DNA of 27,905 bases from Macrostomum lignano (GCA_002269645.1 NIVC01001235.1:1-27905); one strand, 5' to 3'; counted from the first letter of the stretch, positions 3,561 through 26,679 are shown. Numbers and translations are program-made. The notes: a model not told the origin generated them from the letters alone.

Positions 3561-4097
3561 TATGAATAAAAAGTTTCAAGCTTTTTAATTGAAAGTCAAT
3601 ATAACAATTATTTTATTTCTAAGGTAATAAATATTAAATACCTATGTACAAGCATGGAAAGAACAAGTATATTAAAAAATCAAGCTTAGATGCTTAGTTT
3701 AAAAGTTAGAATAATGGATAAAAATACATGTATTTATCATCTAAGAAGCATGGATTGGACTGGGATATTTTAATTATAAAAGAACTGTTTAAATATTTAT
3801 TTTGTTATCATTCTAGTACATGGCCAATGGTAGCTGGTATGATACAAGGGCCATTTGTTGGGATAATAATCATTTGCATATAACTTTTTACTGCCACATT
3901 GAAATTGCTCAAATTAGAAATCAACTTTAAGAGCAATATCCAATGCTACTGTTGAGTGTTGAATAGCTTCTCTATGTCATTCTATTGCTGATTTATGGCT
4001 CATTAAGTGACGAGGTCTAAGAAGTTGCAATTTCGACCTGATCTCTCGACTCTTTCATGCTCTCATCACCTGGACTTGGTACACTCTTGCCCGCGCA

Positions 4098-7000
4098 ATG
4101 TCCAAGAGAAACCCAACATCGGAATTGAATCACGAAAACTGGGATCAGGAGGACGAGAAGGAAGATGTGAGTTGGCTAATTGGGACAGATCTGCTCAGCG
4201 GTGAACGCATTCGATTCTCGCGCCACCACCCTTGGTTTGATTCCATGCGCGACCGAATTCATTGGGGCTTGTGCACGGAGATTGGCCGGGGTTGCCACCC
4301 ATGAGGGCCTAAACCTCTCTCCACTCTCCCTCTCTGCCCCTATCCACTCTGCCTCTGCCTCTCTCCACTCTCCCTCTCTGCCCCTAACCACTCTGCCTCT
4401 GCCTCTCTCCACTCTCCCTCTCTGCCCCTATCCACTCTGCCTCTGCCTCTCTCCACTCTCCCTCTCTGCCCCTAACCACTCCCTCTCCCTCTCTGCCCCT
4501 ATCCACTCCCTCTGCCTCTCCCCACTCTCCCTCTCTGCCCCTATCCACTCCCTCTCCCTCTCTGCCCCTATCCACTCCCTCTGCCTCTCTCCACTCTCCC
4601 TCTGCCCCTATCCACTCCCTCTGCCTTTCTGCCCCTATCCACTCCCTCTGCCTTTCTGCCCCTATCCACTCCCTCTCCCTCTCTGCCCCTTTTCACTCCC
4701 TCTGCCTCTCCCTCTCTGCCCCTATCCACTCCCTCCCTGCCTCTCCACTCTCCCTCTCTCCCTCTGCCTCTCCCTCCCCGCCTCTCTCCACTCTCCCTCT
4801 CTGCCTCTCTCCAACCACCCTCCACTCTCCCTCAAGCTCCTGCGAATATGCTTATGATAATTATCATTATTAATAAGATTTACAATTCTTGTGTCTATCT
4901 AAGAAAACATATTCCAACTGTTTCCAACTAATTCTCACTAACCTAGGCTGGCCGTTTCAAGACTGCGTCGCAGGATGTGCTGAAGGGTCGCGAAATTCGA
5001 GTTGCTAAGCGGCGAGCTCACGATAGTGAGGTGAGAGCTGTGTGACTCAATTATTTTGTCTGTTCTTTTCTACATTATTTATGGTAAGGAATTGTGAAGT
5101 TTGGGTATTGTAAAGGTTAAGAATTATGAAGGTTGGGGATTGTGAAAGTTCGGGATTGTGAAGGTTGGGGATTGTGAAGATTGGGGATTGTGAAGGTTGG
5201 GAATTGTGAAAGTTCGGGATTGTGAAGATCGGGATTTGTGAAGATTGGGACTGTGAAGATCGGGACTGTGAAGATTGGGGATTGTGAAGATCAGGATTGT
5301 GAAGATTGGGGACTGTGAAGCTTGGGGATTGTGAAGATTGGGACTGTGAAGATCGGGACTGTGAAGATTGGGGATTGTGAAGATCGGGATTGTGAAGATT
5401 GGGGACTGTGAAGCTTGGGGATTGTGAAGATTGGGACTGTGAAGATCGGGACTGTGAAGATTGGGGATTGTGAAGATCAGGATTGTGAAGATTGGGGACT
5501 GTGAAGCTTGGGGATTGTAAAGATTGGGACTGTGAAGATCGGGACTGTGAAGATTGGGGATTGTGAAGATCGGGATTGTGAAGATTGGGACTGTGAAGAT
5601 CGGGACTGTGAAGATTGGGGATTGTGAAGATCGGGATTGTGAAGATTGGGACTGTGAAGCTTGGGGATTGTAAAGATTGGGACTGTGAAGATCGGGACTG
5701 TGAAGATTGGGGACTGTGAAGCTTAGGGATTGTGAAGATTGGGACTGTGAAGATTGGGGATTGTGAAGATCGGGATTGTGAAGATTGGGACTGTGAAGAT
5801 TGGAGATTGTGAAGATCGGGACTGTGAAGGCTGAGATTGTGAAGCTTGGAGATTGTGAAGATCGGGACTGTGAAGACTGGGATTGTGAAGCTTGGGGACT
5901 GTGAAGATTGGGGACTGTGAAGCTTGGGACTGTGAAGATTGGGACTGTGAAGATTAGGATTGTGAAGATCAGGACTGTGAAGGCTGGGATTGGAATAGTT
6001 GGATATTAGTTTTAAGCTCATGAGAGCGAGAAACGGCTTGAAATTCAAATGCACAGGGAATGTGCAGTTAATATGGTGAGTCTGAACGGCCCATGTTGCG
6101 GACAAACCATGCTCACAGTTATACAGCAAAACTCTTCTCCGACCCGGCAGGGCAAAGGCACTGGCGGGCTCTTCAAGTCGTTCACCGGCTTCACCGGCTT
6201 CGGTGCCCAGGCCGCGTCGGCCACGACAGCCCCCTCTTTGGCTTTTAACTTCTCGGCCAACGCCACCGCCGCCACCACCACCGATTCGCTGGCGGCCTCG
6301 TCGACGACAACAACGGCGAAATCGGCAACGCCCGCCGCCGATCCGAATGCCGCCCACCTGGCCCAGCTGAAGGCGCTGAACCAGTCCGTGCTGCGCTGGA
6401 TTCAGAGTCACGTGGCTGACAGCCCCTACTGCGTGCTCACGCCCGTGTTCCGCGACTACGAGCGCCACCTGGCCGACATCGAGCGCCGGCACCCGTACGT
6501 GGAGTCGTCGGCAACTGCAAATTCGTCGACTGGAACGGCGGCGGCTGCGGCGGTGACTCCGACGACGACTTCAACAACGCTGGCAGCGCCTTTGAAGGCG
6601 TCGACAAGTCCGGCAAAGTTCAACTTCTCCGCCGCGACTACGTCCACCGCGGCATCGGCACCGACGACCGCTGCCACCACGGCCACCACGATGACGCCCG
6701 CGATGCCTGCCACGTTTAGCTTCAACTCGCAGCAGCCGCAGAAGCCGGTGACTGACGGTGCGGCCACAACGGCAACATTCTTTTTTGGCGCGTCAGCCAA
6801 GTCAACGACGGCTTCGTCGACTTCAACAACGACAACGACGGCGACGTTGGCAACGTCAACGACTGGCTTGACGACAGCGTCGAGTGGGTTCACAGGATTC
6901 AAATTCAACTCAGGGCCGGGGGCGGCGCTGCCGCAACAGCCACCTGGTGGCCTGTCCCTGTTCGGGCTGGGCGGTTTCGCCGCCGCCTCCGCCGCGGCTG

Positions 7001-7440
7001 CCTCGAGCTCCCAGGAGGAGCAGGAAGACGAAGAATACGAGCCGCCGAAGCCGGAGACGCGGGAGATTCGCGAGGACGGCGCCGTGTTCAGCCAGAAGTG
7101 CAAGCTGTTCTACATGGCCGCCGGCGAGGCCAAGCAGTGGAAGGAGAAGGGCGTCGGCTGCGTGCACGTCAAGCCGGCGGAGGCGGAGGGCGGCAGCCGG
7201 GCGCAGTTGATCGTGCGGGCGGACAACACCCTGGGCACCATCATGCTCAACACTCTGGTTACTAAGGACATGAAGCTGTCGGTTGCTAAGAACAATCTCA
7301 GTTTGGCTTGTCCGCCGAATCCGCCAATGCCGAAGTCGGCCAATGACGACCGGCGCATTGTGCCGTTCCTGGTCCGGCTGAAGACCGAGGCCGACGCCAA
7401 GGAGCTGCTGGCCAAGATTGACGGGCTGAGGGAGGCCTGA
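4098..7440 (+). CDS. NUP50: Nucleoporin NUP50 (3 coding exons, 480 aa)
   Basis: Exons 4098-4166 (MSKRNPTSELNHENWDQEDEKED), 4947-5030 (AGRFKTASQDVLKGREIRVAKRR..) and 6151-7440, all phase-0 GT-AG. The N-terminus matches the NUP50 importin-alpha-binding motif (human MAKRNAEKELTDRNWDQEDE..AIKKAKRR). Ser/Thr/Ala-rich FG region and C-terminal Ran-binding domain (FSQKCKLFY..WKEKGVGCVHVK..QLIVRADNTLGTIMLN). Confidence 0.93.
4313..4831. repeat. Pyrimidine-rich minisatellite in NUP50 intron 1
   Basis: Repeated CTCTGCCCCTATCCACTCC / CTCTCCACTCTCC blocks; explains the spurious ORFs at 4176-4857. Confidence 0.9.
5092..5992. repeat. 15-16-bp minisatellite (TGTGAAGATTGGGAC variants) in NUP50 intron 2, with a 93-bp higher-order unit
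   Basis: Tandem TGTGAAG..GGGA(C/T) units. A six-unit 93-bp block recurs about three times at about 5237-5515. Confidence 0.95.
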
Positions 7441-8254
7441 GCCGGACTGCTCAAATATATGCACTATAGGATATGCTAACCCGATAGAAACGCATGGTGA
7501 TTTTGTGGCGCTTAGCTCCTTAACCCTGATGACGCAATCGATTTAGTCGTTTAGCTATCCTGGGGGTCTCTTGCCCCCTCCCCCCACTGCGCTGCCTGAT
7601 TGAGTTAAATTGGTTGCAACCAAGGACTACTTAACAACAAGTCTCAGAAAGTTGGCTTGATACATTTGGTTTTACTTACGTTTTAGAAGTACAGTGAGTA
7701 CTTCTACTGAAAATGCCCAGCAAATGTTCCACTTTGGTAGCCGAAAAATTCATTACGTTTAGTTCGATTCTCTGCATGAATTCATAATCTGCTTATGAAT
7801 TACTTATAATTACTTCCTTAGCAACGGAAATTTTCTATTGTTATTCATGAGTATTAACTGTTGCTATGGGCTTGGCTTAATGATTCGAAACTTTATACAT
7901 TGAAAGTTGTTCGCCAATTTCAAGCTGTTTATTATTATGATAGGAAATTCGATAGAAAATGATGATAATCCAGCCAGTTCTTTGGTCCAGCATTTCCTTT
8001 GTTCGCAATATCCGGTTCGCTGTCTGTTTTGATAACATATTGCTTTTTTAATTCGAACATGTGTACCTGATACTCTCTTGCGTTTGTTGCCATTTAGTTA
8101 TGAATTTGACAATTTGTGTTAGTCTTGTCATCCAATATTGACCCTTCAACACCATTTCTGTCTCGCATTCGTGTCAAACTTCGCTCTTATGTTCAATTAT
8201 TATAACTACAGCTCGACATGTATGCCGCTTGGAAATGGAAGTTAAAGTTAATCA

Positions 8255-8260
8255 AATAAA
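8255..8260 (+). promoter_or_regulatory. Candidate polyadenylation signal of NUP50
   Basis: AATAAA followed by a T-rich tract about 820 nt after the stop codon. Not verified by transcript data. Confidence 0.35.
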
Positions 8261-8412
8261 AGTTTTTTTCTCGACAAAATTTTGAACACGGGGTTGTCTT
8301 GCAATTCACACCCATCAGGGCGGATCCTCACGACACAGAGAGTGTACATGTTTGACGATTAGAAAGCCAGGCAAGCTTTTTTGCCTCAAGGGCCAGATAG
8401 AGAATCTAGCGG

Positions 8413-8625
8413 GCAAGAGGAGGGCGGAGACAGAGGGAATGAAGGAGAAGAGGGATGAAATAGGAGAGAGGAGGGAAGACAAATGATAGGAGAGTAAGGA
8501 GAAGAGAGGAGACGAAAAGAGAAGAGAAGAGGGAAGAAATAGGAGAGAGGAGGGAAGACAAAGGATAGGAGAGTAAGGAGAGAAAATAGAAGAGATTAGA
8601 GAGAAGAGCTGAGAAGAGACAAACC
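8413..8625. repeat. Purine-rich (GA) low-complexity tract with an internal direct repeat
   Basis: AATAGGAGAGAGGAGGGAAGACAAA.GATAGGAGAGTAAGGAGA occurs twice. Confidence 0.8.
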
Positions 8626-8786
8626 TTGAGCAGGCCAGATTGCTATTGTGAAGTTTGAAAGGACCAGAGGATGAATCTTTTAGGCTGTAAGTGTTTTAGC
8701 TTCTGTCTCATTGCCATAGGATATTTCTGCTGTTGAAATGAAAGTATAAATGAAATATCCATAAATTTCATTGGCTGCCTGCCAAG

Positions 8787-11700
8787 GCAACTGAGGCCTG
8801 CGGCGGCAACCCGACGGAGTTCGCCGACCTGCTCAGCTCGGCGCGTCTGCTCAGGGCCATACGCGACGAGCTCGGCTATGCGCGCCCCGGCGCTATTCAG
8901 GCGCGCTGCATCTCTCTGGCGCTGTCTGGCGCCGATCTGCTATGCCAGGCGCCGTCCGGCAGCGGCAAGTCAACCGCCTGCGCTGTGGCCGTCACCCAGC
9001 GATTGCTGACGCTGATTGATGAAGCCAAAAGGCTCAGCCCAGCCTCCGCTGATTTGGAGGGGAATTCTGTCGCCACTCGCGCTCTGGTGCTCTGTCACAG
9101 TCGGGAGCTGGCTGTGCAGACTGTCCGACAGCTGCGCTGCCTCTCCTCTCGCTGTCCGGGACGTCGGCCGCGAGTTGCCGAATTCCTCGGTGGCGCTCCG
9201 GGCAGGTAGCTGGCTGATTGAGTTATTTGGGCTTCTTGAGTGAGATGCTACGGATGTCTTCAGATTGTTTATTGGCGCTTTAGAAGGCTGTATAAGATAG
9301 CTGAATGCTTAAAAGTGTACCGCGATGCTGCAAAACTCGACTGGATGCCTTAAAACTCTGCTGAATGCTTGGAAACTCATCTCAATGCTTGGAAACTCAG
9401 CTGGATGCTTGGAAACTCATCATGATGCTTGGGAACTCAACTGGATGCTTGGAAACTCATCCGATGCTTCGAAACTCAACTGGATGCTTGGAAACTCAGC
9501 TGGATGCTTGGAAACTCATCTCAATGCTTGGGAACTCATCTTAATGCTTGGAAACTCATCTTAATGCTTGGAAACTCATCTTAATGCTTGGGAACTCAAC
9601 TGGATGCTTGGAAACTCATCTCAATGCTTGGAAACTCATCTTAATGCTTGGAAACTTATCTCAATGCTTGGAAACTCAGCTGGATGCTTGAGAAACTCAT
9701 CTCAATGCTTGGAAACTCATCTCAATGCTTGGAACTCATCTCAATGCTTGGAACTCATCTCAATGCTTGGAACTCATCTCAATGCTTGGGAACTCAGCTG
9801 GATGCTTGGAACTCATCTCAATGCTTGGGAACTCAGCTGGATGCTTGGAACTCATCTCAATGCTTGGGAACTCATTTTAATGCTTGGAAACTTATCCCAA
9901 TGCTTGGAAACTCAGCTGGATGCTTGAGAAACTCATCTCAATGCTTGGAAACTCAGCTGGATGCTTGAGAAACTCATCTCAATGCTTGGAAACTCATCTC
10001 AATGCTTGGAACTCATCTCAATGCTTGGAACTCATCTCAATGCTTGGGAACTCAGCTGGATGCTTGGAACTCATCTCAATGCTTGGGAACTCAGCTGGAT
10101 GCTTGGAACTCATCTCAATGCTTGGGAACTCATTTTAATGCTTGGAAACTTATCCCAATGCTTGGAAACTCAGCTGGATGCTTGAGAAACTCATCTCAAT
10201 GCTTGGAAACTCATCTCAATGCTTGGAAACTCATCTCAATGCTTGGAAACTCATCTCAATGCTTGGAAACTCATCTCAATGCTTGGAAACTCATCTCAAT
10301 GCTTGGAAACTCATCTCAATGCTTGGAAACTCATCTTAATGCTTGGAAACTCATTTTAATGCTTGGAAACTCATCTCAATGCTTGGAAACTCATCTTAAT
10401 GCTTGGAAAACCATTTTAATGCTTGGAAACTCAGCTGGATGCTTGAGAAACTCATCTCAATGCTTGGGAACTCAACTGGATGCTTGGAAACTCATCCGAT
10501 GCTTCGAAACTCAACTGGATGCTTGGAAACTCAGCTGGATGCTTGGAAACTCATCTCAATGCTTGGGAACTCATCTTAATGCTTGGAAACTCATCTTAAT
10601 GCTTGAAAACTCATCTCAATGCTTGGAAACTCATCTCAATGCTTGGAAACTCATTTTAATGCTTGGAAACTCATCTCAATGCTTGGAAACTCATCTTAAT
10701 GCTTGGAAACTCATCTCAATGCTTGGAAACTCAGCTGGATGCTTGAGAAACTCATCTTAATGCTTGGAAACTCAGCTGGATGCTTGAGAAACTCATCTTA
10801 ATGCTTGGAAACTCAGCTGGATGCTTGAGAAACTCATTTCAAAGCTTGGAAACTCATCTCAATGCTTGGAACTTAGCTGGATGCTTGGAACTCATCTCAA
10901 TGCTTGGGAACTTAGCTGGATGCTTGGAACTTAGCTGGATGCTTGGAACTCATCTCAATGCTTCGAACTCATCTCAATGCTTCGAACTCATCTCAATGCT
11001 TGGGAACTCAGCTGGATGCTTGGAACTCATCTCAATGCTTGGGAACTTAGCTGGATGCTTGGAACTCATCTCAATGCTTGGAACTCATCTCAATGCTTGG
11101 GAACTCATCTCAATGCTTGGGAACTTAGCTGGATGCTTGGAACTCATCTCAATGCTTGGGAACTTAGCTGGATGCTTGGAACTCATCTCAATGCTTGGAA
11201 CTCATCTCAATGCTTGGGAACTTAGCTGGATGCTTGGAACTCATCTCAATGCTTCGAACTCATCTCAATGCTTGGGAACTCAGCTGGATGCTTGGAACTC
11301 ATCTCAATGCTTGGGAACTCAGCTGGATGCTTGGAACTCATCTCAATGCTTCGAACTCATCTCATTGCTTGGGAACTCAGCTGGATGCTTGGAACTCATC
11401 TCAATGCTTGGGAACTCAGCTGGATGCTTGGAACTCATCTCAATTCTGGGAAACTCTGTGTTTTGCTGTGTCAAAAGGTACCTGAAGGCTCGGAAAGGTA
11501 CTTGATATGCAAAGTATGCAGGCTTGGTTTACGCATCTCAGACATGCAATTGAGACGATGCACTCCCATCGCTTTTTTCATCAAGACGAGACGCTGCCGC
11601 TGCTGCCTCCCGGCCGGACATCGCAGTCGGCTCGCCTGGCCGCCTGCTGGACTTGGCACGCCGGGGTCACCTGCGCACCGACCAGCTGCGAATTGTTATG

Positions 11701-13945
11701 CTGGACGACTGCGACCAGCTGCTGCTGCGCGATGAGGCGGTGCAGGCGCTGCTGCTGGCACCACCCGATCGGCAGGTTCTCATGTGCTGCACCACCATCA
11801 GTGCGGCTGTGAGTGCCGGGCCTGACAGACAGACTGACTGACTGACTGACTGACTGACTGACTGACTGACTGACTGACTGACTGACTGACTGACTGACTG
11901 ACTGACTGACTGACTGACTGACTGACTGACTGACTGACTGACTGACTGACTGACTGACTGACTGACTGACTGACTGACTGACTGACTGACTGACTGACTG
12001 ACTGACTGACTGACTGACTGACTGACTGACTGACTGACTGACTGACTGACTGACTGACTGACTGACTGACTGACTGACTGACTGACTGACTGACTGACTG
12101 ACTGACTGACTGACTGACTGACTGACTGACTGACTGACTGACTGACTGACTGACTGACTGACTGACTGACTGACTGACTGACTGACTGACTGACTGACTG
12201 ACTGACAGACACAGACAGACACAAACACACAGTAAGCCACACAGGCAGGTAATACTTATATTTCCTAAACCTCACAGATGCGGCAGCAGTGCCTGGAGCT
12301 GATGCAGAATCCGCATGAGCTGTGCCTGAGCGATGAGGCTCAGCTGGCTCCGCACAGCCTCCTGCAGTATCGCGTGCCGATTGCAGACTGCGGCTACAGA
12401 GCTAAGAATGCTCGGCTGCTGAAGCTGTTGCGAGTTCTCGAGTTTGAACAGGTGCACCTGGCTTTAGTGATAATCTGGGGAGTTGGCATTCTGCCTACTT
12501 CTAATCGTGGTGACTCATTTCATTGAGCCACTGCAAACCTCCGCAGGCAATCGTATTTGTCAATTCCCCGCGCCAGTGCGACAATCTGGAGAAATTCCTG
12601 AAATCTCGCGGCCTGTCAGCGCTGGCGGCGCACGGGGACCTGTGCCAGGCCAGCCGGATGGAGAACTACCGGCTGTTCAGGAATTGCAAGCGGCGCATTC
12701 TAATCAGCACGGATTTGTACGCCTTTGGTCTGCAGTTTCAACGGGTCGGCGTAGTTATTAACTACTGTCTGCCTGCGGACCCGGGTCTCTACCTGTACAG
12801 GGTGAGCAGTTAGAGAATTTTGAAAGTCAGCTAGTCTGTCACATTCTTAGAATAGCCATTAATAGATTATTCCAGCACTTCATTCAAAGCATATTTAGAA
12901 TCACACTTTAACCAGCTTTAGACTCGCCCTTGAATCATTCTTAGAATCGCTCTTAAACCATTTTTAGAATCGCTCTTAAACTGTTTCTTAGAATCTCCCT
13001 TAAACCTTCTTAGAATCTCCGTAAAACCTTTTTTAGAATCGCCCTCAAACCCTTTCTTAGAATCTCCCTGAAACCCTTTCTTAGAATTGCCCTCAAACCC
13101 TTTCTTGGAATTGTCATTAAACCCTTTCCTAGAATCGCCCTCAAAACATTCTTAGAATCGCCCTCAAACTCTTTCCTAGAATCACCATTAAACCCTTTCT
13201 TAGACTCACCCTCCAACATTTTCCTAGAATCGCCCTCAAACCCTTTCTTAGAATCTCCCTGAAACCCTTTCTTAGAATTGCCCTCAAACCCTTTCTTGGA
13301 ATTGTCATTAAACCCTTTCCTAGAATCGCCCTCAAACCCTTTCTTAGAATCACCATTAAACCCTTTCTTAGACTCGCCCTCAAACCCTTTCTTTGAATCG
13401 CCTTTAAAACCCTTTCTTAGAATCGCCCTTAAATTGTTTTTAAATCGCCTTTAGATAATTCTTAGGATCGCACGTAAAAAAATCTTAGAATCGTCATTAA
13501 ATAATTCTCAGCACTTCATTCAAGGCATTTTTAGAATCGCTCTAAAACTGTTTCTAGAATCGACCATTAACCATATTCTTAGAATCGACCTTAAAAAATT
13601 ATAGACTCGCCCTTAAACGAGCTTTGAGAATCAGATGCTCACAAACACCAATAGCTTTCTCAACTTTTTTATTCACAGATCGGCCGTGCTGCACACTTCG
13701 GAAGCCGCGGACTCGCCCTGACGCTGCAGGAGCCGGACTCGGAGGCGCATGTGTTGAATGAGGCGGAGTCCAGATTCTGTATGCAAATAGCGCACCTGCC
13801 CGCCACAGTTCACGTATGCGACTATTTGCCGCCTGCTGCGGGTGGAGACGCCCAGCCACGCACTGGAGTGATTTTCTTTGCTGTGGAGCCGAATCGGGCT
13901 GCTGATGAAGCTGTGGTTGATGACGAATATCAGGATGCTGAATAG
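8787..13945 (+). CDS. DDX39: Divergent UAP56/DDX39-family DExD-box helicase (5 exons, 445 aa, no genomic ATG found)
   Basis: Exons 8787-9205, 11586-11808, 12278-12451, 12547-12801 and 13679-13945 splice in frame (GT-AG; phases 2,0,0,0). UAP56-specific signatures: DLLCQAPSGSGKS, LVLCHSRELA, GSPGR, ELMQNPHELCLSDEAQLAPHSLLQY, KNARLLKLLRVLEFEQ, HVLNEAESRFCMQIAHLP. Catalytic motifs II, III, V and VI are altered. The 5' end is uncertain, and the symbol denotes family rather than proven orthology. Confidence 0.85.
9325..11450. repeat. ~2.1-kb 19-21-bp minisatellite (ATGCTTGGAAACTCATCTCA / ATGCTTGGAAACTCAGCTGG) in helicase intron
   Basis: About 100 head-to-tail units of two alternating types, with duplicated multi-unit blocks and no unique spacers. 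Confidence 0.95.
11832..12203. repeat. (GACT)93 microsatellite in helicase intron
   Basis: Uninterrupted GACT run flanked by GACA units. Confidence 0.97.
12890..13615. repeat. ~24-bp minisatellite (TTAGAATCGCCCTCAAACCCTTTC) in the last helicase intron
   Basis: Degenerate tandem units, best conserved at 13010-13420. Confidence 0.9.
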
Positions 13946-13961
13946 ACTGACCGCTTACCGC

Positions 13962-14441
13962 GATCTCAAAGAATGAGCACTCAGATCTCAAAGAATGAGC
14001 ACTGAGATCTCAAAAGATTGAGCACCCAGATCTCAAGGATGAGCACCAAGATCTCAAAGGATGAGCACCCAGATCTCAAAGAATGAGCACTCAGATCTCA
14101 AAGGATGAGCACCCAAATCTCAAGGAATGAGCACCCAGATCTCAAGGAATGAGCACTCAGATCTCAAAGAATGAGCACTCAGATCTCAAGGATGAGCAGC
14201 AAGATCTCAAAGGATGAGCACCCAGATCTCAAAGAATGAGCACTCAGATCTCAAAGGATGAGCACCCAAATCTCAAGGAATGAGCACTCAGATCTCAAAG
14301 AATGAGCACTCAGATCTCAAGGAATGAGCACCCAGATCTCAAGGAATGGCACCCATATCTCAAAGGATGAGCACCCAGATCTCAAGGAATGAGCACCCAG
14401 ATCTCAAGGAATAAGCACCCAGATCTCAAAGAATGAGCACC
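13962..14441. repeat. 21-22-bp minisatellite (AGATCTCAAAGAATGAGCACTC) directly after the helicase stop
   Basis: About 22 tandem units. Confidence 0.95.
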
Positions 14442-14779
14442 TAGGTCTTAACGGATCAGTACCCGACTTTCTTTGCTAAGCTTCTGCAATATCAGTCTCA
14501 ATTCGCCTTATTGCATGCTTACCATATTCACTGTAGTGACTCTCTGATGCATAAAAAACGGCTGTGATAATTCAATTTTTACACACTTATCTTCTATTGT
14601 AGTTCTATCTTCTTTTTACAATCCATAGTTGTTGACTACTTGAGTAACTTTATATGCATATATATCTGATACATAAATAATGGATTTTATGATCTGAAAT
14701 GCAACTTTGTTTACTTTGCTTTTTGGTGTTTTTGGCTTCAATCAAAATAGCTAAATAAGTCAGCTAGAAACAAATTAGA

Positions 14780-15710
14780 TTGCAGCTAGGTGCTAAATAG
14801 TTGGCAGATAGATGCTAATTAGTTGGCAGATAGATGCTAAATTAGGTGGCAGATAGATGCTAATTAGTTGGCAGATAGATGCTAAATTAGGTGACAGCTG
14901 GATGCTAATTGGTTGGCAGATAGATGCTAATTAGGTGACAGCTGGATTCTAATTAGGTGGCAGATAGATGCTAATTAGGTGACAGCTGGATGCTAATTAG
15001 GTGGCAGATAGATGCTAATTAGGTCGCAGCTGGATGCTATTTAGGTGGCAGATAGATGCTAATTAGGTGACAGCTGGATGCTAATTAGCTGGCAGATAGA
15101 TGCTAATTAGGTGGCAGATAGATGCTAATTAGGTGGCAGATAGATGCTAATTAGGTGGCAGATACATGTAGATGCTAATTAGGTGGCAGCTGAATGCTTA
15201 TTAGGTGGCAGCTGGATGCTAATTAGGTGGCAGCTGGATGCTAATTAGGTGGCAGCTAGATGCTAATTAGGTGGCAGATACATGTAGATGCTAATTAGGT
15301 GGCAGCTGAATGCTAATTAGGTGGCAGCTGGATGCTAATTAGGTGGCAGATACATGTAGATGCTAATTAGGTGGCAGCTGAATGCTAATTAGGTGGCAGC
15401 TGAATGCTAATTAGGTGGCAGCTGGATGCTAATTAGGTGGCAGATACATGTAGATGCTAATTAGGTGGCAGCTGAATGCTAATTAGGTGGCAGCTGGATG
15501 CTAATTAGGTGGCAGCTGAATGCTAATTAGGTGGCAGATACATGTAGATGCTAATTAGGTGGCAGCTGAATGCTAATTAGGTGGCAGCTGGATGCTAATT
15601 AGGTGGCAGCTGGATGCTAATTAGGTGGCAGATAGATGCTAATTAGGTCGCAGCTGGATGCTATTTAGGTGGCAGCTGGATGCTAATTAGGTGGCAGCTA
15701 GATGCTAATT
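14780..15710. repeat. 22-bp minisatellite (GATGCTAATTAGGTGGCAGCTG/ATA) upstream of AMDHD2
   Basis: About 40 tandem units ending about 20 nt before the AMDHD2 acceptor. Confidence 0.95.
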
Positions 15711-15729
15711 ACCACCTGAAGTGTTCCAG

Positions 15730-17941
<2,212 letters not shown>

Positions 17942-17964
17942 TGAGCAGACTAGGTTAACAGATG

Positions 17965-18300
17965 CGACCTTGGCTGACCCGGTTGCCACCCTGGTTTCTA
18001 GTTTCATGATGACCTTAGCTGACCCTTTATCAACTGGCTTGACCTTAGCTGACCCCTGTTTTAACTGGCTTGACCTTAGCTGACCCCTGTTTTAACTGGC
18101 TTGACCTTAGCTGACCCTTGTTTTAACTGGCTTGACCTTATCTGACCCCTGTTTTAACTGGCTTGATCTTATCTGACCCCTGTTTTAACTGGCTTGACCT
18201 TAGCTGACCCTGTTTTAACTGGTTTGACCTTAGCTGACCCCTGATTAAACTGGCGTAAAATTTGGTGATCCTATTAAAACTGCCGTAACCTTGATTGACC
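17965..18300. repeat. 31-bp minisatellite (GACCTTAGCTGACCCCTGTTTTAACTGGCTT) after the AMDHD2 stop
   Basis: About 7 well-conserved units with degenerate edges. Confidence 0.9.
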
Positions 18301-19124
18301 CCGCTTTTTTATTTGACCTTAAGAATCAGACCTGATCTACATGTATTCATTCCACAGTGCAACTGCAGCATTAGTACTCGTATATTGCGATTCAGCAAGT
18401 GCTAATCAGACTTGCTTAGAATAATCTTTCATTTGCGGAATTTCAGAGCTTCATGTTCGCGAAATAGAGAATTTTTGTGCCTTAAATTTGTTTAGCTATC
18501 AATCACTGAGTTGTCATTATTTCTGTAAGTACATTCGTATTCATTTTCATTAACTCTTTCAGATCAGTAAAAGAGTAAGTATTAATAGACACTATTCATA
18601 ATTCTAGAAATTGTTTTCAGATTTAGATGCAAAATGCTTCTGACTGGGAGATATTAGCAAGCTTATTTGAGTCTTTATACCTTGAGCGGAATATTAAATA
18701 CACCGTCATTTCTTTGTAACTCCCAGCGAGTTGCCCAGTTTTGACCATAGAGCATGTGCAGACCAGCAGTTCTTGTCCTTTATTCCTGATTCTAAAACCG
18801 TGATTCACTTCTCGGTCTTATTGGCACTCAAAATGATTGCATTGTGCGATTTGCGTGTGAGGTTGAGTTGTGCCTTGAGTCCGTGCCACTAAACTCTGCC
18901 GCTGACAGAGCGTTCTGGGCTGCCACCAATGTAAGAGCTGCGAATTTACGGTAACTCCTAAAGGTCAGAGGTTAAAGTGCACAGAGAGCACGTGATCAAA
19001 CAGGTGGAATACGATAGCAAATACAAGCTCAAAGGCGCAACTCAACCTGACATGAGAACCTCACAGCACTACTCGTGAGTAGGCACTCAAGCTTATGCAT
19101 AAACCGTCCCCGCAGCCGGCAGCC

Positions 19125-21824
19125 ATGCCCGACCCCGTCGCCGCCGACCAGCAGAGCGCCCTTTCCAGCTGGCTGAACTCCGTGGCCCCGGAGCGAATCT
19201 TCTGCGGTGTCCTTGGCTTCTTCTGGCTCACCTACCTGTGGGAGAACTACCTGGCCTGGCGGCAGTACAAACTCATGCGCGACTCGCCTCAGCTGCCCGA
19301 GGCCGCCCGGCAGCTTACGGACGACCAGACCTACGCCAAGGCCCGGGCCTACAGCATCGACAAGAGCCGGTACAGTGCTGTCCGCGGCCTCTGGTCGCAG
19401 CTCCTGTTCACCTTCATCCTGCTAGCCGAGCTCATGCCCCGCCTGTGGGCCGTGGCCGGCCGCCATCTGGACAGCCTGGCCGGGCCTGATGCCAGCCGCG
19501 GCCAGCTGCCGCAGTCGATGGTGTTCCTGGTGTACGTCATGCTGCTGTCCTTCCTAATCGACCTGCCCTGGTCGGTGTACAAGAACTTCGTGCTGGAGGC
19601 CAGGCACGGCTTCAACAAGCAGACACCGGGTTTCTACGCCAAGGACCAGCTTAAGAGCCTGCTGCTGAGCATGGCCATCGGCCTGCCGATCGCCGCCGCC
19701 CTGCTCTGGCTGATCGAGCGTGGCGGGCCGTACTTCTACGTGTACGCCTGGCTTCTGGCCTCCGTTGTGATTTTCGTTCTCATGCTGGTGTACCCCAGCT
19801 TCATTGCGCCCCTGTTTGACACGTACGAGCCGCTGCGCGAGGGCCAGCTGAAGCAGCGCATTGAAGATCTGGCTAAGCGGCTGGAGTTCCCGCTGACCCA
19901 GCTGCTGGTGAGACGGTTGGGCGAATGCGGTTAACTGAGAACACTCAATTGCATGGAGTGGGGTTAGAGCTCGGGTGTGGGTGACAGGCGGGTGCGAGGC
20001 TTGGGTGGATGACATTGGCTTGAGGTAGGTGAGAGTAGCTTGGGGTGGGTGACAGTGGCTTGTGATGGGTGACAGCGGCTTGGGGTTGGTGACAGCGGCT
20101 TGGAGTGGGTGAGAGTGCCTTGGGGTGGGTGAGAGTAGCTTGGGGAGTGTGAGAGTGGCTTGGGTGGGTAAGAGTAGGTTGGGGTGGGTAAGAGTAGGTT
20201 GGGGAGGGTAAGAGTAGGTTGGGGTGGGTAAGAGTAGGTTGGGGAGGGTAAGAGTAGGTTGGGGTGGGTAAGAGTAGGTTGGGGTGGGTAAGAGTAGGTT
20301 GGGGTGGGTAAGAGTAGGTTGGGGTGGGTAAGAGTAGGTTGGGGTGGGTAAGAGTAGGTTGGGGTGGGTGAGAGTAGGTTGGGTGGGTAAGAGTAGGGTG
20401 GGGTGGGTGAGAGTGAATGAGAGCCGCCGGCTGGGTGAGAGGCCGTCAGCCGGCGAGGAGTTCACTCAGAATCGCCGGCACCTCCCCGCAGGTGATCGAG
20501 GGTTCGCGCCGCTCGGCCCATAGCAACGCCTACTTATTCGGGCTGTGGCGCAGCAAGCGCATTGTGCTGTTCGACACCCTAATCGAAGGCTACCAGATGC
20601 AGTCGGTGAAGGAAAAGGAGGAGAAGGAGCGGGAAAAACGGGAGAAGGAGAAGGCCGCCGAAGGCCAGGGTGAGAAAAGCGACGAGGCGAAAGCGGAACC
20701 GGATTCTGCAGCCGGCGAGGAAAAGGAAAAGGAGGCCAAGAAGGGCTGCAACGATGATGAGATTCTGGCCGTGCTGGGTCACGAGCTGGGCCACTGGTCT
20801 CTGGGCCACAACGTGTCCAACATTTTCATCAGCGAGGTCAACCTGTTCCTCATGTTCTTCGCCTTCGGCCAGCTCCTTAACTGCCACTCTGCGTTCGCCG
20901 CCTTCGGCTTCCAGCAGCCGGCGCCGCTGCTGCTCCGGCTGGCCTTCGTGCTGGAGTTCCTGCTGTCGCCATACAATGAGCTGCTCGGCTTCGCCATGAT
21001 CTGCCTCACCCGCCTGTTCGAGTTCCAGGTGCGCTCGCCGCTGCTCAACCTCTTGCTCTCTATCCCCCATCCTCCCTCTCCCTCTCCCTCTCCTCCCTCT
21101 CCCTCTTCTCCCTCTCCCTCTCCTCCCTCTCCCTCTCCCTCTCCTCCCTCTCCCTCTTCTCCCTCTCTAGTCTCCCTCTCCCTCTTCTCCCTCTCCCTCT
21201 TCTCCCTCTCCCTCTTCTCCCTCTCCCCCTCCCTCTTCTCCCTCTCCAGTCTCCCTCTCCCTCTTCTCCCTCTCCCTCTTCTCCCTATCCCTCTTCTCCC
21301 TCTCCCCCTCCCTCTTCTCCCTCTCCAGTCTCCCTCTCCCTCTTCTCCCTCTCCCTCTTCTCCCTCTCCCTCTTCTCCCTCTCCCCTCTCCCTCTTCTCC
21401 CTCTCCAGTCTCCCTCTCCCTCTTCTCCCTCTCCCTCTTCTCCCTCTCCCCCTCCCTCTTCTCCCTCTCCAGTCTCCCTCTCCCTCTTCTCCCTCTCCCC
21501 CTCCCTTTTCTCCCTGTCTCTCTCCTCCCTCTCACCACTGTACCTCTTCTTCATCTCCTCAGCTTTTACTACTAGCAGTAGCCATTCATATAATTGCTTA
21601 TAAAATTTCATTCTTTTTTTCAAACTTAGGCCGACCGATTCTCAGTGAGGCTGGGCTTTGGCCAGCAGCTGAAGACGGCGCTAATTAAACTGCACACGGA
21701 CAACCTGTCCTACCCGCTGTTTGACCCGCTGTACAGCGCTTTCAATCACTCGCACCCCACTGTGCTGCACCGGCTGGCCGCTATTGATCAGGCCGAGGCC
21801 GAGGACGAGGCCAAGACTAAATAG
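19125..21824 (+). CDS. ZMPSTE24: CAAX prenyl protease 1 (Ste24/FACE-1 zinc metalloprotease), 3 exons, 504 aa
   Basis: Exons 19125-19907, 20492-21028 and 21630-21824, all phase-0 GT-AG. Motifs: WENYLAWRQ, KARAYSIDKSRY, FVLEARHGFNKQT, PSFIAPLFDTYEPL, EGSRRSAHSNAY, KRIVLFDTL, GHELGHW (HExxH), EFQAD and HSHP..HRL. ATG 19125 has the better context (GCAGCCATGC); an in-frame ATG at 19095 is an alternative. Confidence 0.95.
20020..20415. repeat. 20-bp G-rich minisatellite (GGGGTGGGTAAGAGTAGGTT) in ZMPSTE24 intron 1
   Basis: About 12 near-perfect units at 20160-20410 plus degenerate units upstream. Confidence 0.93.
21065..21535. repeat. Polypyrimidine (CCCTCT/CTTCT) tract in ZMPSTE24 intron 2
   Basis: Almost purely C/T on the + strand; source of the Glu/Arg/Gly and Ser/Pro/Leu pseudo-ORFs. 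Confidence 0.93.
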
Positions 21825-21959
21825 GGGGAGTCTCAGTGCCGTTTCTTGGATTTCATTCCGTAGGGAGGCCGTCTGTAGCCATACTTTATATAGATTCTTT
21901 AACTGCCCTCTGCCGACACTTATAGGTGTGCCTGAAACTGCTTAGCACAGGGATGGAGA

Positions 21960-22205
21960 TTGGATGAAATCAGAGAGTGAAATAGATGAGTGGAAGTGAG
22001 ATTAGAGAGTGGGATAGATAAGAGATGAGATTAGAGAGAGTTAGATAAGAGGAGATGAGATTAGAGGGCGAGATAGATAATAGGCGAGATATGAGACTGT
22101 GATAGATAAGAGAAGGTGAGATTAGAGGGTGAGATAGATAATAGGCGAGAGATTAGAAACTGGGATAGATAAGAGTAGGTAAGATTAGAGAAAGAGATAG
22201 ATAGT
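21960..22205. repeat. Degenerate ~27-bp GAGATTAGAG..GATAGATAA repeats in the ZMPSTE24 3' region
   Basis: Several imperfect units; the homologous array is at about 25040-25310. Confidence 0.75.
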
Positions 22206-22666
22206 GATTGTGTAATCAGAGTGTTTGCTGGGATTAAAGAGTTCGATGAGACATAAAATATGAGATTAGCGAAACTAGATAAGTGAAAAGAGAAGTGAGA
22301 TCACTTTTTAGACACTTCGTATATGTTGATAAGAAAATGGATTCAGCACAGCTCTATTTATATGATTGATATCAAAATATGTTCATTTCTGTCATGTATC
22401 CGCTGTCCTTTGTTAGCTCGATAATTGCTAAATTTGCTCCGAGTTTTTCGGATGTATTTTTCATAGCCTGCTGTATGATTTTTCAAATATTTATTCTGAG
22501 TTAGGCAAGCAGTGAGGGCCAGGGACCGGAGCCCAGTGCATCCAAGCATTAATTTTGTTTAATTTCATTCGATAATACTTGATTACAGCGCTACTTCTAG
22601 TAGTGAATTAAAAACACAAAGTCTGCTTTATTAAGCTTTTATTTTATTTTCTGTCTTTAAGGCTAA

Positions 22667-22672
22667 AATAAA
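22667..22672 (+). promoter_or_regulatory. Candidate polyadenylation signal of ZMPSTE24
   Basis: AATAAA about 840 nt after the stop; a second AATAAA lies near 22855. Not verified. Confidence 0.3.
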
Positions 22673-22980
22673 TCAAATAATATTTGTAGCTGTCAACCCC
22701 GTGCGCTGCGATTCGCTCAAGTTCTTTGCAGTCTGCTAAAGGCAAAACAATATATACTTTACAGTTGTGTACTCCTGCGGCTGCGTGCCAAACTTTGGTT
22801 TGTCAGTCTGACATCATCTGGCTTGAACTAGTGTAGCTCTGATCAATATAATTCAATAAATTTATGCGGCCAAAGCTTCCGCTTCATTTGGTTAAGGGCG
22901 AGTTGGCCTGTGGGGCAAAAAATCGTGCTATTTTCATTCTGGCTTCATTTTTTGATGAATAAAATGTCCATCAGAAATGG

Positions 22981-23490
22981 AGTCCAGCAAAGGAGGTTAC
23001 AGACAGTCCGGCACAGGATGTGACAAGCATTCCGGCACAGGTCACAGACATTCCAGTGCAGGAAGTCACCGACATTCCAGTGCAGGAAGTCACAGACAGT
23101 CCAGCGCAGGAGGTCACAGACAGTCCGGCGCAGGAGGTCACAGACATTCCGGCACAGGAGGTGACAGACAGTCCAGCGCAGGAGGTCACAGGCAGTCCGG
23201 CGCAGGAGGTCACAGACATTCCGGCACAGGAGGTGACAGACAGTCCAGCGCAGGAGGTCACAGGCAGTCCGGCGCAGGAGGTCACAGACATTCCGGCACA
23301 GGAGGTGACAGACAGTCCAGCGCAGGAGGTCACAGGCAGTCCGGCGCAGGAGGTCACAGACATTCCGGCACAGGAGGTGACAGACAGTCCAGCCCAGGTG
23401 ACAGACAGTCCAGGACAGGAGGCCGCAGACAGTCCAGCACGGGAGGTGACAGACAGTCTAGCACAGGAGGCCACAGACAGTCAAGCACAG
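22981..23490. repeat. 24-bp minisatellite (CACAGACAGTCCAGCGCAGGAGGT), copy 1
   Basis: About 21 units with a 72-bp three-unit higher-order block. Confidence 0.93.
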
Positions 23491-23559
23491 CCCGGTGTAA
23501 AATGGTTAGCATGGTTGTGACACTCGAGGACACTCGCTCTGTTACACCCTTCCAAAAAT

Positions 23560-23941
23560 GACACTAAACGACACTTATCTCTACTGTCGCCGGCACGACA
23601 CTGACGTGCGACACTGCCCTAAGACATTGGCCTGGATTGTCGCCGGCACGACACTGACATGCGACACTGCCCTACGACACTGACATGCGACACTGCCCTA
23701 CGACACTGGCCTGGACTGTCGCCGGCACGACACTGACATGCGACACTGCCCTAAGACATTGGCCTGGACTGTCGCCGGCACGACACTGACATGCGACACT
23801 GCCCTACAACACTGGCCTGGACTGTCGCCGGCACGACACTGACATGCGACACTGCCCTAAGACACTCATCTGACACTCATCCGACACTCATGTGACACTC
23901 ATCCGACACTCATCTGACACTCATCCGACACTCATGTGACA
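23560..23941. repeat. GACACT-based composite satellite (~52-bp units, then 11-12-bp units), copy 1
   Basis: CTGTCGCCGGCACGACACTGACATGCGACACTGCCCTA repeats followed by GACACTCAT(C/G) repeats. Confidence 0.9.
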
Positions 23942-24037
23942 CAGAGGTTAAAGTACACAGAGAGCACGTGACCAAACAGGTGGAATACGATAGCAAATAC
24001 AAGCTCGAAGGCGCAACTCAACCTGATATGAGAACCT

Positions 24038-24612
24038 TCTCCCTCTCCAGTCTCCCTCTCCCCTCTTCTCCCTCTCCCTCTTCTCCCTCTCCCTCTTCTC
24101 CCTCTCCAGTCTCCGTCTCCCTCTTCTCCGTCTCCCTCTTCTCCGTCTCCCTCTTCTCCCTCTCCCCCTCCCTCTTCTCCCTCTCCAGTCTCCCTCTCCT
24201 CTTCTCCCTCTCCCCTCCCTCTTCTCCGTCTCCCTCTTCTCCGTCTCCCTCTTCTCCCTCTCCCCCTCCCTCTTCTCCCTCTCCAGTCTCCCTCTCCCTC
24301 TTCTACCTCTCCCCCTCCCTCTTCTCCCTCTCCAGTCTCCCTCTCCCCTCTTCTCCCTCTCCCTCTTCTCCCTCTCCAGTCTCCCTCTCCCCTCTTCTCC
24401 CTCTCCCTCTTCTCCCTCTCCCCCCCTCTTCTCCTTCTCCAGTCTCCCTCTCCCCTCTTCTCCCTCTCCCTCTTCTCCCTCTCCCCCTCCCTCTTCTCCC
24501 TCTCCCCCTCCCTCTTCTCCCTCTCCCTTTTCTCCCTTCTCCACCTCCTTCCCTCTCTCCTTCTTTCCTCTCCTTCCCTCTCCCTTTTCTCCCTGTCTCT
24601 CTCCTCCCTCTC
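24038..24612. repeat. Polypyrimidine tract, duplicate of ZMPSTE24 intron 2
   Basis: Same CCCTCT/CTTCT composition and the same 3' end as 21065-21629. Confidence 0.9.
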
Positions 24613-24708
24613 ACCACTGTACCTCTTCTTCATCTCCTCAGCTTTTACTACTAGCAGTAGCGATTCATATAATTGCTTATAAAATTTCATTCTTTTTTTC
24701 AAACTTAG

Positions 24709-24901
24709 GCCGACCGATTCTCAGTGAGGCTGGGCTTCGGCCAGCAGCTGAAGACGGCGCTAATTAAACTGCACACGGACAACCTGTCCTACCCGCTGTT
24801 TGACCCGCTGTACAGTGCGTTCAATCACTCGCACCCCAGTGCTGCACCGGCTGGCCGCTATTGATCAGGCCGAGGCCGAGGACGAGGCCAAGACTAAATA
24901 G
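24709..24901 (+). pseudogene. ZMPSTE24: Duplicated last exon of ZMPSTE24 with a 2-nt deletion
   Basis: Identical acceptor (TTTTTTCAAACTTAG). 193 nt versus 195 nt. CCCACTGTG>CCCAGTG frameshift plus three synonymous substitutions. No upstream coding exons in this copy. Confidence 0.85.
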
Positions 24902-26597: not shown

Positions 26598-26679
26598 CAG
26601 CCCGGTATAAAATGGTTAGCATGGTTGTGACACTCGAGGACACTCGCACTGTCACACCCTTCCAAAAATGACACTAAAC

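What the first reader, a model, noticed from the sequence alone, without database searches (positions are those of the whole stretch)
8787..19127. Genes lacking a genomic start codon begin at phase-0 acceptors: the start codon may come from a trans-spliced leader
Seen: the first coding exon of the helicase starts at GCCAAG|GCA (8787) and that of AMDHD2 at TTCCAG|GCA (15730). In both, the frame is closed by a stop just upstream (TGA 8751, TAA 15706) with no intervening ATG, and I found no convincing upstream ATG exon with a strong phase-0 donor. AMDHD2 is already essentially full length (about 403 aa) if a single Met is added. ZMPSTE24 also has an acceptor (CCCCGCAG|, 19115) exactly 9 nt, in frame, before its ATG. 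Established: flatworm spliced leaders end in AUG, and in Schistosoma that AUG can act as the initiator Met. Inference: these mRNAs are SL trans-spliced and start M-ATEA.., M-AAEA.. and M-PAAM... Three of three phase-0 acceptors fit this model.
Basis: partly seen in the sequence, partly recalled or inferred. Interest (0 to 1): 0.82.

Follow-up and report, generated by a model that had tools for sequence, protein, structure and literature searches.

The report
Flatworm genes started by spliced-leader AUG
The window is a Macrostomum lignano contig where two genes have no start codon of their own and almost certainly get it from the AUG ending the trans-spliced leader. This mechanism is already known in flatworms, and GenBank already annotates these loci as starting at those splice sites.

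Summary
The window is the whole GenBank contig NIVC01001235.1 of Macrostomum lignano (assembly Mlig_3_7). Its published annotation is RNA-seq based, and the pipeline behind it cuts gene boundaries at spliced-leader (SL) and poly(A) signals. All three start in phase 0.

- **SL sequence.** The M. lignano SL ends in ...TTGCATG.
- **Helicase.** Its first in-frame Met is residue 178 of 445, after the P-loop.
- **AMDHD2.** Its first Met is residue 155 of 403, yet its N-terminus aligns from residue 9 of human AMDHD2.
- **No alternative start.** I found no credible upstream ATG exon. An independent annotation (WormBase ParaSite/UniProt) also found no Met.
- **ZMPSTE24.** It has its own ATG 9 nt downstream of the acceptor, and a published table flags its transcript TRANSSPLICED.

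The four same-strand genes (NUP50, helicase, AMDHD2, ZMPSTE24) form an operon-like transcription unit.

These are new, unremarkable members of a known kind.

I did not see SL-containing reads myself. Use of the SL AUG as initiator is inferred.

The parts
4065..7440 (+). NUP50-like gene, first cistron and control. Exons are 4065-4166, 4947-5030 and 6151-7440. It has its own genomic ATG at 4098 (MSKRNPTSELNHENWDQEDEKED). The annotated 5' end at 4065 does not follow an AG.
   Evidence: Pfam finds a RanBP1 domain. GenBank PAA70466.1.
7441..8786 (+). Intercistronic region / outron upstream of the helicase. It holds the in-frame stop TGA at 8751-8753 and the AG acceptor at 8785-8786 (ctgcctgccaag|).
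   Evidence: No credible ATG mini-exon was found here.
8787..13945 (+). DDX39/UAP56-like DEAD-box helicase with no genomic start codon. Exons are 8787-9205, 11586-11808, 12278-12451, 12547-12801 and 13679-13945 (stop TAG at 13943). It encodes 445 aa. The first Met is residue 178 and the P-loop is at residue 58.
   Evidence: The model is an exact match to GenBank PAA70467.1 'partial'.
13946..15729 (+). Intercistronic region / outron upstream of AMDHD2. Tandem arrays (13962-14448 and 14773-15711) occupy 1426 of its 1784 nt. It holds the in-frame stop TAA at 15706-15708 and the acceptor gtgttccag| at 15728-15729, which matches the published trans-acceptor motif [T/C]TNCAG.
15730..17941 (+). AMDHD2 (N-acetylglucosamine-6-phosphate deacetylase) with no genomic start codon. 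Exons are 15730-15927, 16282-16628 and 17280-17941. The first Met is residue 155. This copy lacks 1, 2 and 2 nt at about 17803, 17832 and 17840, so the annotated CDS stops early at 17886.
   Evidence: GenBank PAA70468.1.
17942..19115 (+). Intercistronic region / outron upstream of ZMPSTE24. It holds the in-frame TAG at 19080 and ATG at 19095, both removed if trans-spliced, and the acceptor gtccccgcag| at 19114-19115.
19116..21824 (+). ZMPSTE24 (CAAX prenyl protease 1). Exons are 19116-19907, 20492-21028 and 21630-21824. The genomic ATG is at 19125. The 9 nt CCGGCAGCC between the acceptor and that ATG are in frame, so an SL AUG would give M-PAA-MPDP...
   Evidence: GenBank PAA70469.1 (507 aa, starts PAAMPDP). 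The transcript is flagged TRANSSPLICED.

Best explanation
The window is a Macrostomum lignano contig carrying an operon-like, same-strand transcription unit: NUP50, a DDX39-like helicase, AMDHD2 and ZMPSTE24.

The three downstream cistrons are matured by SL trans-splicing at the AG acceptors that end at 8786, 15729 and 19115. The 35-nt leader brings the cap and ends in AUG. At all three sites that AUG lands in phase 0 with the open reading frame.

For the helicase and AMDHD2 it is the only AUG that can yield a full-length protein: M-ATEACGG... and M-AAEAGQ.... For ZMPSTE24 it would add M-PAA in front of the genomic Met, or be skipped by leaky scanning.

What is shown:
- the species identity;
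- that the M. lignano leader sequence ends in ATG (literature);
- that the published transcript-based gene starts coincide exactly with the three acceptors, in frame;
- that there is no genomic ATG and no plausible upstream ATG exon;
- that the coding regions are intact and conserved.

What is inferred:
- that SL reads underlie these particular annotated boundaries;
- that ribosomes initiate at the SL AUG.
For: 1. Identity. The exact protein look-ups and the DNA identity show that the window is NIVC01001235.1 of assembly GCA_002269645.1.

2. Annotated starts. The CDSs begin at 8787, 15730 and 19116. All are 5'-partial with the first base as codon position 1, and each directly follows an AG. 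NUP50, which has its own ATG, starts at 4065 without a preceding AG.

3. How the annotation was made. The TBONE pipeline cuts transcriptional units at SL-read peaks and poly(A) sites (PMC5730564). The helicase, AMDHD2 and ZMPSTE24 are g1, g2 and g4 of one unit prefix, Mlig017025. At the sister locus all four genes are g3-g6 of Mlig032846.

4. Leader sequence. The SL ends in ...TTGCATG followed by a GTAAG donor. 30% of M. lignano genes are trans-spliced and 15% lie in operons. Repeats inflate the intercistronic distances (PMC8629364).

5. Acceptors. The AMDHD2 acceptor TTCCAG fits the published trans-acceptor motif [T/C]TNCAG. The helicase AAG acceptor has a validated cis counterpart in the same gene: tcatcaag|A at exon 2 is the only AG compatible with the frame. 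The CCCCGCAG acceptor of ZMPSTE24 matches its own exon-2 cis acceptor.

6. Need for the SL AUG. The first Met is residue 178 of 445 in the helicase and 155 of 403 in AMDHD2. AMDHD2 residue 4 aligns with human AMDHD2 residue 9 (E = 2e-105).

7. Independent annotation. The ML2/WormBase ParaSite models also lack a Met: A0A1I8JCH0 starts FQAAEAGQ, A0A1I8JDT9 starts QPAAMPDP, and the helicase models start at exon 2.

8. Published flags. ZMPSTE24 transcript RNA1509_3291 and the NUP50 cluster are flagged TRANSSPLICED.

9. Mechanism precedent. [quoted passage not shown] All flatworm SLs end in ATG. [quoted passage not shown]
Against: - I saw no SL-containing read or cDNA for these junctions. The supplementary tables held here are truncated and list neither AMDHD2 nor this helicase.
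- At the two sister loci the helicase CDS is annotated 3 nt further downstream (gca|ACT), which is not after an AG, although the DNA is identical.
- The helicase acceptor CCAAG does not fit [T/C]TNCAG.
- Older UniProt models join NUP50 to the helicase, and AMDHD2 to ZMPSTE24, in cis through these same acceptors.
- Exact look-ups for Met-prefixed proteins found nothing, so no public ORF call shows the SL Met.
- The SL AUG has U at position -3, a weak context (my reading of the SL sequence).
- There are no proteomic data.
Confidence: 0.85

Rival explanations
1. The start codon comes from the upstream gene. Cis-splicing from a donor inside the last exon of NUP50 (or of AMDHD2) to the same acceptor would make in-frame fusion proteins, NUP50-helicase and AMDHD2-ZMPSTE24, as the main products.
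For: UniProt models from the earlier ML2 assembly are such fusions. A0A1I8HP04 (903 aa) reads ...RRIVPFL|ATETCGG. A0A1I8GTD8 (946 aa) reads ...RGLSV|PAAMPDP. Parasitic flatworms share acceptors between cis- and trans-splicing (PMC12582326).
Against: The later annotation, which is bounded by SL and poly(A) signals, splits them into separate genes with 5' ends at the acceptors. AMDHD2 is itself Met-less in the fusion model (it starts FQAAEAGQ), so fusion does not solve its start. Gene predictors tend to fuse a Met-less ORF to its upstream neighbour. The donors used (GTCCGG, GTTGAG) are weak.
Confidence: 0.06
2. An unannotated short upstream exon carrying ATG is cis-spliced to 8787 or 15730.
For: Phase-0 ATG...GT candidates exist by chance: 17 upstream of the helicase and 8 upstream of AMDHD2. 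Examples are ATG|GTGATT at 7494-7496 and MLTIFT at 14515.
Against: All are AT-rich (17-46% G+C, against about 60-65% in the real exons). Their donors are weak, and five of the eight AMDHD2 candidates sit inside tandem-repeat units. Two independent annotations found no such exon.
Confidence: 0.03
3. Translation starts at a non-AUG codon in the unspliced 5' region, or at the first internal Met.
For: The frame is open for 11 codons before 8787 and 7 codons before 15730. Internal Mets exist at residue 178 (helicase) and 155 (AMDHD2).
Against: An internal start would delete the Q motif and P-loop of the helicase. It would also delete the conserved N-terminal 150 residues of AMDHD2, which align with the human enzyme. 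The annotated transcripts do not include the upstream codons.
Confidence: 0.03
4. The Met-less genes are pseudogenes, or the ATG was lost through assembly error.
For: The window's AMDHD2 copy has frameshifts near its 3' end. The assembly is long-read based and M. lignano carries many duplicated loci.
Against: The helicase frame is intact across 5 exons. The AMDHD2 indels differ between copies and are absent from L003 and from the UniProt model. Three contigs have identical sequence at the AMDHD2 and helicase acceptors.
Confidence: 0.02

Closest known systems
SL-AUG-dependent mRNAs of Schistosoma mansoni (Cheng, Cohen, Ndegwa & Davis 2006, J Biol Chem 281:733)
   Same: The leader ends in AUG. 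The acceptor is in phase 0 with an ORF that has no genomic initiator, so the leader's AUG serves as the initiator Met.
   Different: The species differs (a free-living macrostomid flatworm) and so do the genes. Here the initiator role is inferred and was not tested by translation assays.
Macrostomum lignano SL trans-splicing and operons (Wudarski et al. 2017; Ustyantsev & Berezikov 2021)
   Same: Same organism, same leader and same assembly. The loci are already annotated with 5' ends at these acceptors. The intercistronic regions are repeat-filled, as those authors describe.
   Different: In the text I could read, those papers do not discuss use of the SL AUG as start codon or these particular genes. 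GenBank simply labels the CDSs 'partial'.
slORFs (ORFs created by leader-borne start codons; slORFfinder, PMC9851317)
   Same: The start codon is supplied by the leader. The ZMPSTE24 case is an N-terminal extension of an existing ORF.
   Different: slORFfinder addresses mostly near-cognate NUG codons in nematodes, Oikopleura and trypanosomes. Here the codon is a canonical AUG at the leader's very 3' end.
Caenorhabditis elegans SL2 operons
   Same: A polycistronic pre-mRNA is resolved by trans-splicing at downstream cistrons.
   Different: Nematode leaders do not end in AUG and the genes keep their own start codons. M. lignano has a single SL and much longer, repeat-laden intercistronic spacers.

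Membership tests
SL-AUG-initiated flatworm mRNAs | The host has an SL RNA whose exon ends in AUG directly before the GU donor. | tested here: met
   The species was fixed as M. lignano by exact protein and DNA identity. The SL sequence ...TTGCATG with a GTAAG donor comes from PMC8629364.
SL-AUG-initiated flatworm mRNAs | The mature mRNA 5' end lies at a canonical AG acceptor with no upstream cis donor, meaning it is SL trans-spliced there. | tested here: inconclusive
   The annotated 5' ends at 8787, 15730 and 19116 each follow an AG, and the pipeline uses SL reads. An explicit TRANSSPLICED flag was found only for ZMPSTE24. I did not see SL junction reads. The sister-locus helicase start is offset by 3 nt.
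SL-AUG-initiated flatworm mRNAs | The acceptor is in phase 0 with the ORF, with no stop between the junction and the conserved protein. | tested here: met
   The GenBank proteins begin at the first base of each exon.
SL-AUG-initiated flatworm mRNAs | No in-frame genomic AUG is available upstream of essential domains, so the mRNA depends on the leader AUG. | tested here: met
   This holds for the helicase (first Met at residue 178, P-loop at 58) and AMDHD2 (first Met at 155). It does not hold for ZMPSTE24, which has ATG 19125 only 9 nt downstream of the acceptor.
SL-AUG-initiated flatworm mRNAs | The protein N-terminus or initiating ribosome maps to the leader AUG. | not testable with these tools
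   This needs N-terminal proteomics, ribosome profiling or a reporter assay.
M. lignano operon (Ustyantsev & Berezikov criteria) | Adjacent same-strand genes, with the downstream gene trans-spliced and a repeat-adjusted intergenic distance under 1 kb. | tested here: inconclusive
   The genes are on the same strand and share transcriptional-unit prefixes. For helicase to AMDHD2, 1784 nt minus 1426 nt of tandem repeats leaves about 360 nt. For AMDHD2 to ZMPSTE24 about 930 nt remain. For NUP50 to helicase about 1.2 kb remain with TRF alone. Transposon masking was not done.

The most novel reading that the evidence does not exclude
The three trans-splice acceptors may serve a double role. Besides receiving the leader, they could be used in cis from cryptic phase-0 donors at the ends of NUP50 and AMDHD2. 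That would make real in-frame NUP50-helicase and AMDHD2-ZMPSTE24 fusion proteins. The balance between cis and trans use would then decide whether the Met-less downstream cistrons are translated alone or as fusions. More broadly, a large share of the 'partial' CDSs in the M. lignano annotation might be obligately SL-AUG dependent. That would make trans-splicing a translational gate for operon genes.
Probability: 0.12. Interest if true: 0.45.

Novelty: new member of a known kind. Interest (0 to 1): 0.25.

Why it matters
It explains why GenBank labels these M. lignano CDSs 'partial' and why an older annotation fused neighbouring genes. The real start codon is not in the genome at that locus. Adding the leader's Met would complete the models.

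It also means that expression of AMDHD2 and this helicase depends absolutely on trans-splicing. This is relevant for designing transgenes and knock-ins in this model flatworm. It does not change what is known about the mechanism.

Tried and rejected
- Protein searches with AMDHD2 exon 1 (no hits) and ZMPSTE24 exon 1 (best 46-48% identity, to crab, Hydra and Schistosoma) failed to show the species. Only the full helicase query hit a M. lignano fragment.
- Rfam found nothing in the window. A search for the SL 3' end hit only an intronic tandem repeat, so no SL RNA gene lies here.
- Exact look-ups of eleven Met-initial candidate proteins found nothing. These covered SL-Met, alternative-acceptor, internal-Met and upstream-ATG versions, based on the window and sister-locus sequences. 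No public ORF call therefore carries the leader Met.
- Supplementary tables of four papers were searched for AMDHD2, the helicase and the Mlig017025 IDs. The tables are truncated, and only ZMPSTE24 and NUP50 entries were found.
- Cheng 2006 and Wasik 2015 are not held, so I cite them second-hand.
- Transcript RNA1509_10881 (DDX39B-like, 1326 nt) was considered as this helicase. I rejected it because its E-value against human DDX39B is too strong for a 35%-identical paralog.
- Poly(A) hexamer scanning was uninformative.


Full report
**1. The observation**

- **Helicase.** Exon 1 begins ...ctgcctgccaag|GCAACTGAG at 8787. The frame is closed by TGA at 8751, and there is no ATG in the 11 codons between.
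- **AMDHD2.** Exon 1 begins ...gtgttccag|GCAGCCGAG at 15730. TAA at 15706 closes the frame, and there is no ATG in the 7 codons between.
- **ZMPSTE24.** It has ...gtccccgcag|CCGGCAGCCATG, with the acceptor ending at 19115 and the ATG at 19125, in frame.

Neither helicase exon 1 (140 aa) nor AMDHD2 exon 1 (66 aa) contains a single Met.

Pfam and PDB searches confirm the gene identities:
- DEAD and Helicase_C domains, with closest solved structures DDX39B/UAP56;
- N-acetylglucosamine-6-phosphate deacetylase, matching human AMDHD2 (7nut) at E = 2e-105;
- Peptidase_M48_N plus M48.

A fourth same-strand gene lies upstream: a NUP50-like protein with a RanBP1 domain. It has an ordinary genomic ATG at 4098, encoding MSKRNPTSELNHENWDQEDEKED followed by a gtgagt donor.

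**2. Gene models**

The helicase assembles into five exons with an unbroken frame of 445 codons: 8787-9205, 11586-11808, 12278-12451, 12547-12801 and 13679-13945. Its first Met is residue 178, long after the Q motif and the P-loop at residue 58.

Its exon-2 acceptor is tcatcaag|A. This is the only AG compatible with the frame, so AAG acceptors are really used in this gene. That removes the main weakness of the ccaag| site at 8787.

AMDHD2 has three exons (15730-15927, 16282-16628, 17280-17941). Residue 4 of the exon-1 product aligns with residue 9 of the human enzyme, so only the Met is missing. Its first Met is residue 155.

ZMPSTE24 has exons 19125-19907, 20492-21028 and 21630-21824.

An exhaustive list of upstream ATG...GT phase-0 mini-exons gave only AT-rich candidates with weak donors. 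Five of the eight AMDHD2 candidates sit inside tandem-repeat units.

**3. What the window is**

The first two protein searches found nothing close. The full helicase then hit a UniRef fragment from Macrostomum lignano that is identical over the shared exons.

An exact-sequence look-up showed that my 445-aa model without Met is GenBank PAA70467.1, 'hypothetical protein BOX15_Mlig017025g1, partial', on a contig of 27,905 nt. Fetching that record (NIVC01001235.1, assembly GCA_002269645.1) gave DNA identical to the window.

**4. The key result**

The CDSs annotated on that record are:
- 4065-7440 (NUP50, 491 aa);
- 8787-13945 (helicase, 445 aa);
- 15730-17886 (AMDHD2, 383 aa);
- 19116-21824 (ZMPSTE24, 507 aa, beginning PAAMPDP).

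All four are labelled partial.

The annotation comes from the Mlig_RNA_3_7_DV1 transcriptome. [quoted passage not shown]

The helicase, AMDHD2 and ZMPSTE24 carry one unit prefix (Mlig017025 g1, g2, g4). At a sister locus (L003, NIVC01000942.1) all four genes are Mlig032846 g3-g6, and AMDHD2 and ZMPSTE24 start at the same acceptors.

AG makes up 6.5% of dinucleotides in the window. Three of three ends falling directly after an AG and in frame is therefore not chance. The NUP50 end at 4065 does not follow an AG.

**5. The leader**

The M. lignano SL is CGGTCTCTTACTGCGAAGACTCAATTTATTGCATG, followed by a GTAAG donor. About 30% of genes are trans-spliced and 15% are in operons. The top trans-acceptor motif is [T/C]TNCAG, and repeats inflate the intercistronic distances (PMC8629364).

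The AMDHD2 acceptor TTCCAG fits that motif. Tandem arrays fill 1426 of the 1784 nt between the helicase stop and the AMDHD2 acceptor.

Published tables flag the ZMPSTE24 transcript RNA1509_3291 and the NUP50 cluster as TRANSSPLICED. That NUP50 cluster includes Mlig008447.g2, the window's gene, and its RanBP1 score of 43.4 equals mine.

**6. Independent annotation**

Models from the earlier ML2 assembly, held in UniProt, also found no start codon:
- AMDHD2 A0A1I8JCH0 starts FQAAEAGQ;
- Ste24 A0A1I8JDT9 starts QPAAMPDP;
- the helicase fragments start at exon 2.

Where a complete ORF was forced, the predictor fused neighbours through the same acceptors...RRIVPFL|ATETCGG and ...RGLSV|PAAMPDP. This is what one expects when the initiator is not in the genome. 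It also defines the main rival, real cis fusions, which I rate as unlikely to be the principal product.

**7. Mechanism and what remains inferred**

Use of the flatworm SL 3'-terminal AUG as initiator is established:
- In S. mansoni it is in frame in 28% of trans-spliced transcripts, and more than 40 cDNAs need it (Cheng et al. 2006, as summarised in PMC9851317).
- All reported flatworm SLs end in ATG (PMC12582326).
- For Macrostomum the terminal ATG is described as the likely translation start codon (PMC10468722).

The best reading is therefore a polycistronic unit whose downstream cistrons receive cap, leader and, for two of them, their only usable AUG by trans-splicing.

I did not see SL junction reads or protein N-termini. 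Exact look-ups for Met-prefixed proteins found nothing.

For ZMPSTE24 the SL AUG is optional. Its context is weak (U at -3, C at +4) and a genomic AUG follows 9 nt later, so both N-termini are possible (inference).

One sister locus has an in-frame 3-nt deletion in those 9 nt. This is compatible with coding constraint but is a single event.

**8. Loose ends**

At both sister loci the helicase CDS is annotated from ACT, 3 nt after the AG, although the DNA is identical. I have no firm explanation. The fused UniProt model uses the AAG|GCA site.

The window's AMDHD2 lacks 1, 2 and 2 nt near its 3' end. L002 lacks a different base. L003 and the UniProt model are intact. After repair the window and L002 proteins are identical, so these are most likely assembly indels.

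**9. Verdict**

However, the mechanism, the organism's leader and the gene boundaries are all already in the literature and in GenBank. What is new is only the explicit statement that AMDHD2 and this DDX39-like helicase of M. lignano depend on the leader's AUG.

Noticed in passing
window 17795-17845 (and L002, L003): The window's AMDHD2 copy lacks 1 nt at about 17803, 2 nt at about 17832 and 2 nt at about 17840 relative to its sister loci. This causes two frame changes and a premature annotated stop at 17886. L002 has a different 1-nt deletion, while L003 and UniProt A0A1I8JCH0 are intact. These are most likely long-read assembly indels, not a pseudogene.
   Followed up: yes
window 21058-23942 vs 24093-27015: A roughly 2.9-kb tandem segmental duplication (89% identity, many gaps). 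It covers part of the last ZMPSTE24 intron, the last exon and downstream repeats. The second exon copy (about 24709-24898) carries a frameshift. UniProt model A0A1I8JDT9 strings both exon copies together.
   Followed up: partly
window 8787-13945: The helicase is a fast-evolving paralog of UAP56/DDX39: the best non-Macrostomum hits are about 35% identical. Its core motifs are degenerate compared with a typical UAP56 (P0122). It has DDCD for DECD, GSGKS for GMGKT, CCTT for FSAT and YRIGRAAHFG for HRVGRAGRFG, so it may be catalytically impaired. It sits directly downstream of NUP50, another mRNA-export/nuclear-pore gene.
   Followed up: partly
L002 10001 and L003 10001 (equivalent to window 8790): At both sister loci the GenBank helicase CDS starts at ACT (TETCGG...), 3 nt after the AAG|GCA acceptor and not after an AG. 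The DNA is identical to the window, where the CDS starts at GCA. Unexplained; it may be an SL-trimming or peak-calling artefact.
   Followed up: partly
window 4065: The NUP50 annotated 5' end follows ...catgctctc, not an AG, and no AG occurs in the 40 nt upstream. Yet the NUP50 gene cluster is flagged TRANSSPLICED in a published table. The ORF is open from 4065 to the real ATG at 4098, which is why GenBank calls it partial.
   Followed up: partly
L002 around 20340-20351 (equivalent to window 19116-19124): One sister locus has CCGGCC instead of CCGGCAGCC between the ZMPSTE24 acceptor and its ATG. This is an in-frame 3-nt deletion that would keep an SL AUG in frame.
   Followed up: partly
window 7494-7499: ATG|GTGATT lies 54 nt after the NUP50 stop. 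An ATG directly followed by a donor-like GT mimics the end of the SL exon. Spliced to 8787 it would give the same M-ATEA product. It is probably a chance occurrence.
   Followed up: no
window 9333-11456, 11822-12210, 12918-13617, 13962-14448, 14773-15711, 15991-16228, 16647-17254, 20020-20414, 21077-21533: Most introns of the three downstream genes, and the helicase-AMDHD2 spacer, are largely filled by a private tandem array. Periods are 4 to about 150 nt, for example (CTGA)n, (CTGT)n and a 2.1-kb array of 20/40-nt units. The (CTGT)n array in AMDHD2 intron 2 stays open in the exon frame and merged exons 2 and 3 into a single 534-codon ORF.
   Followed up: no
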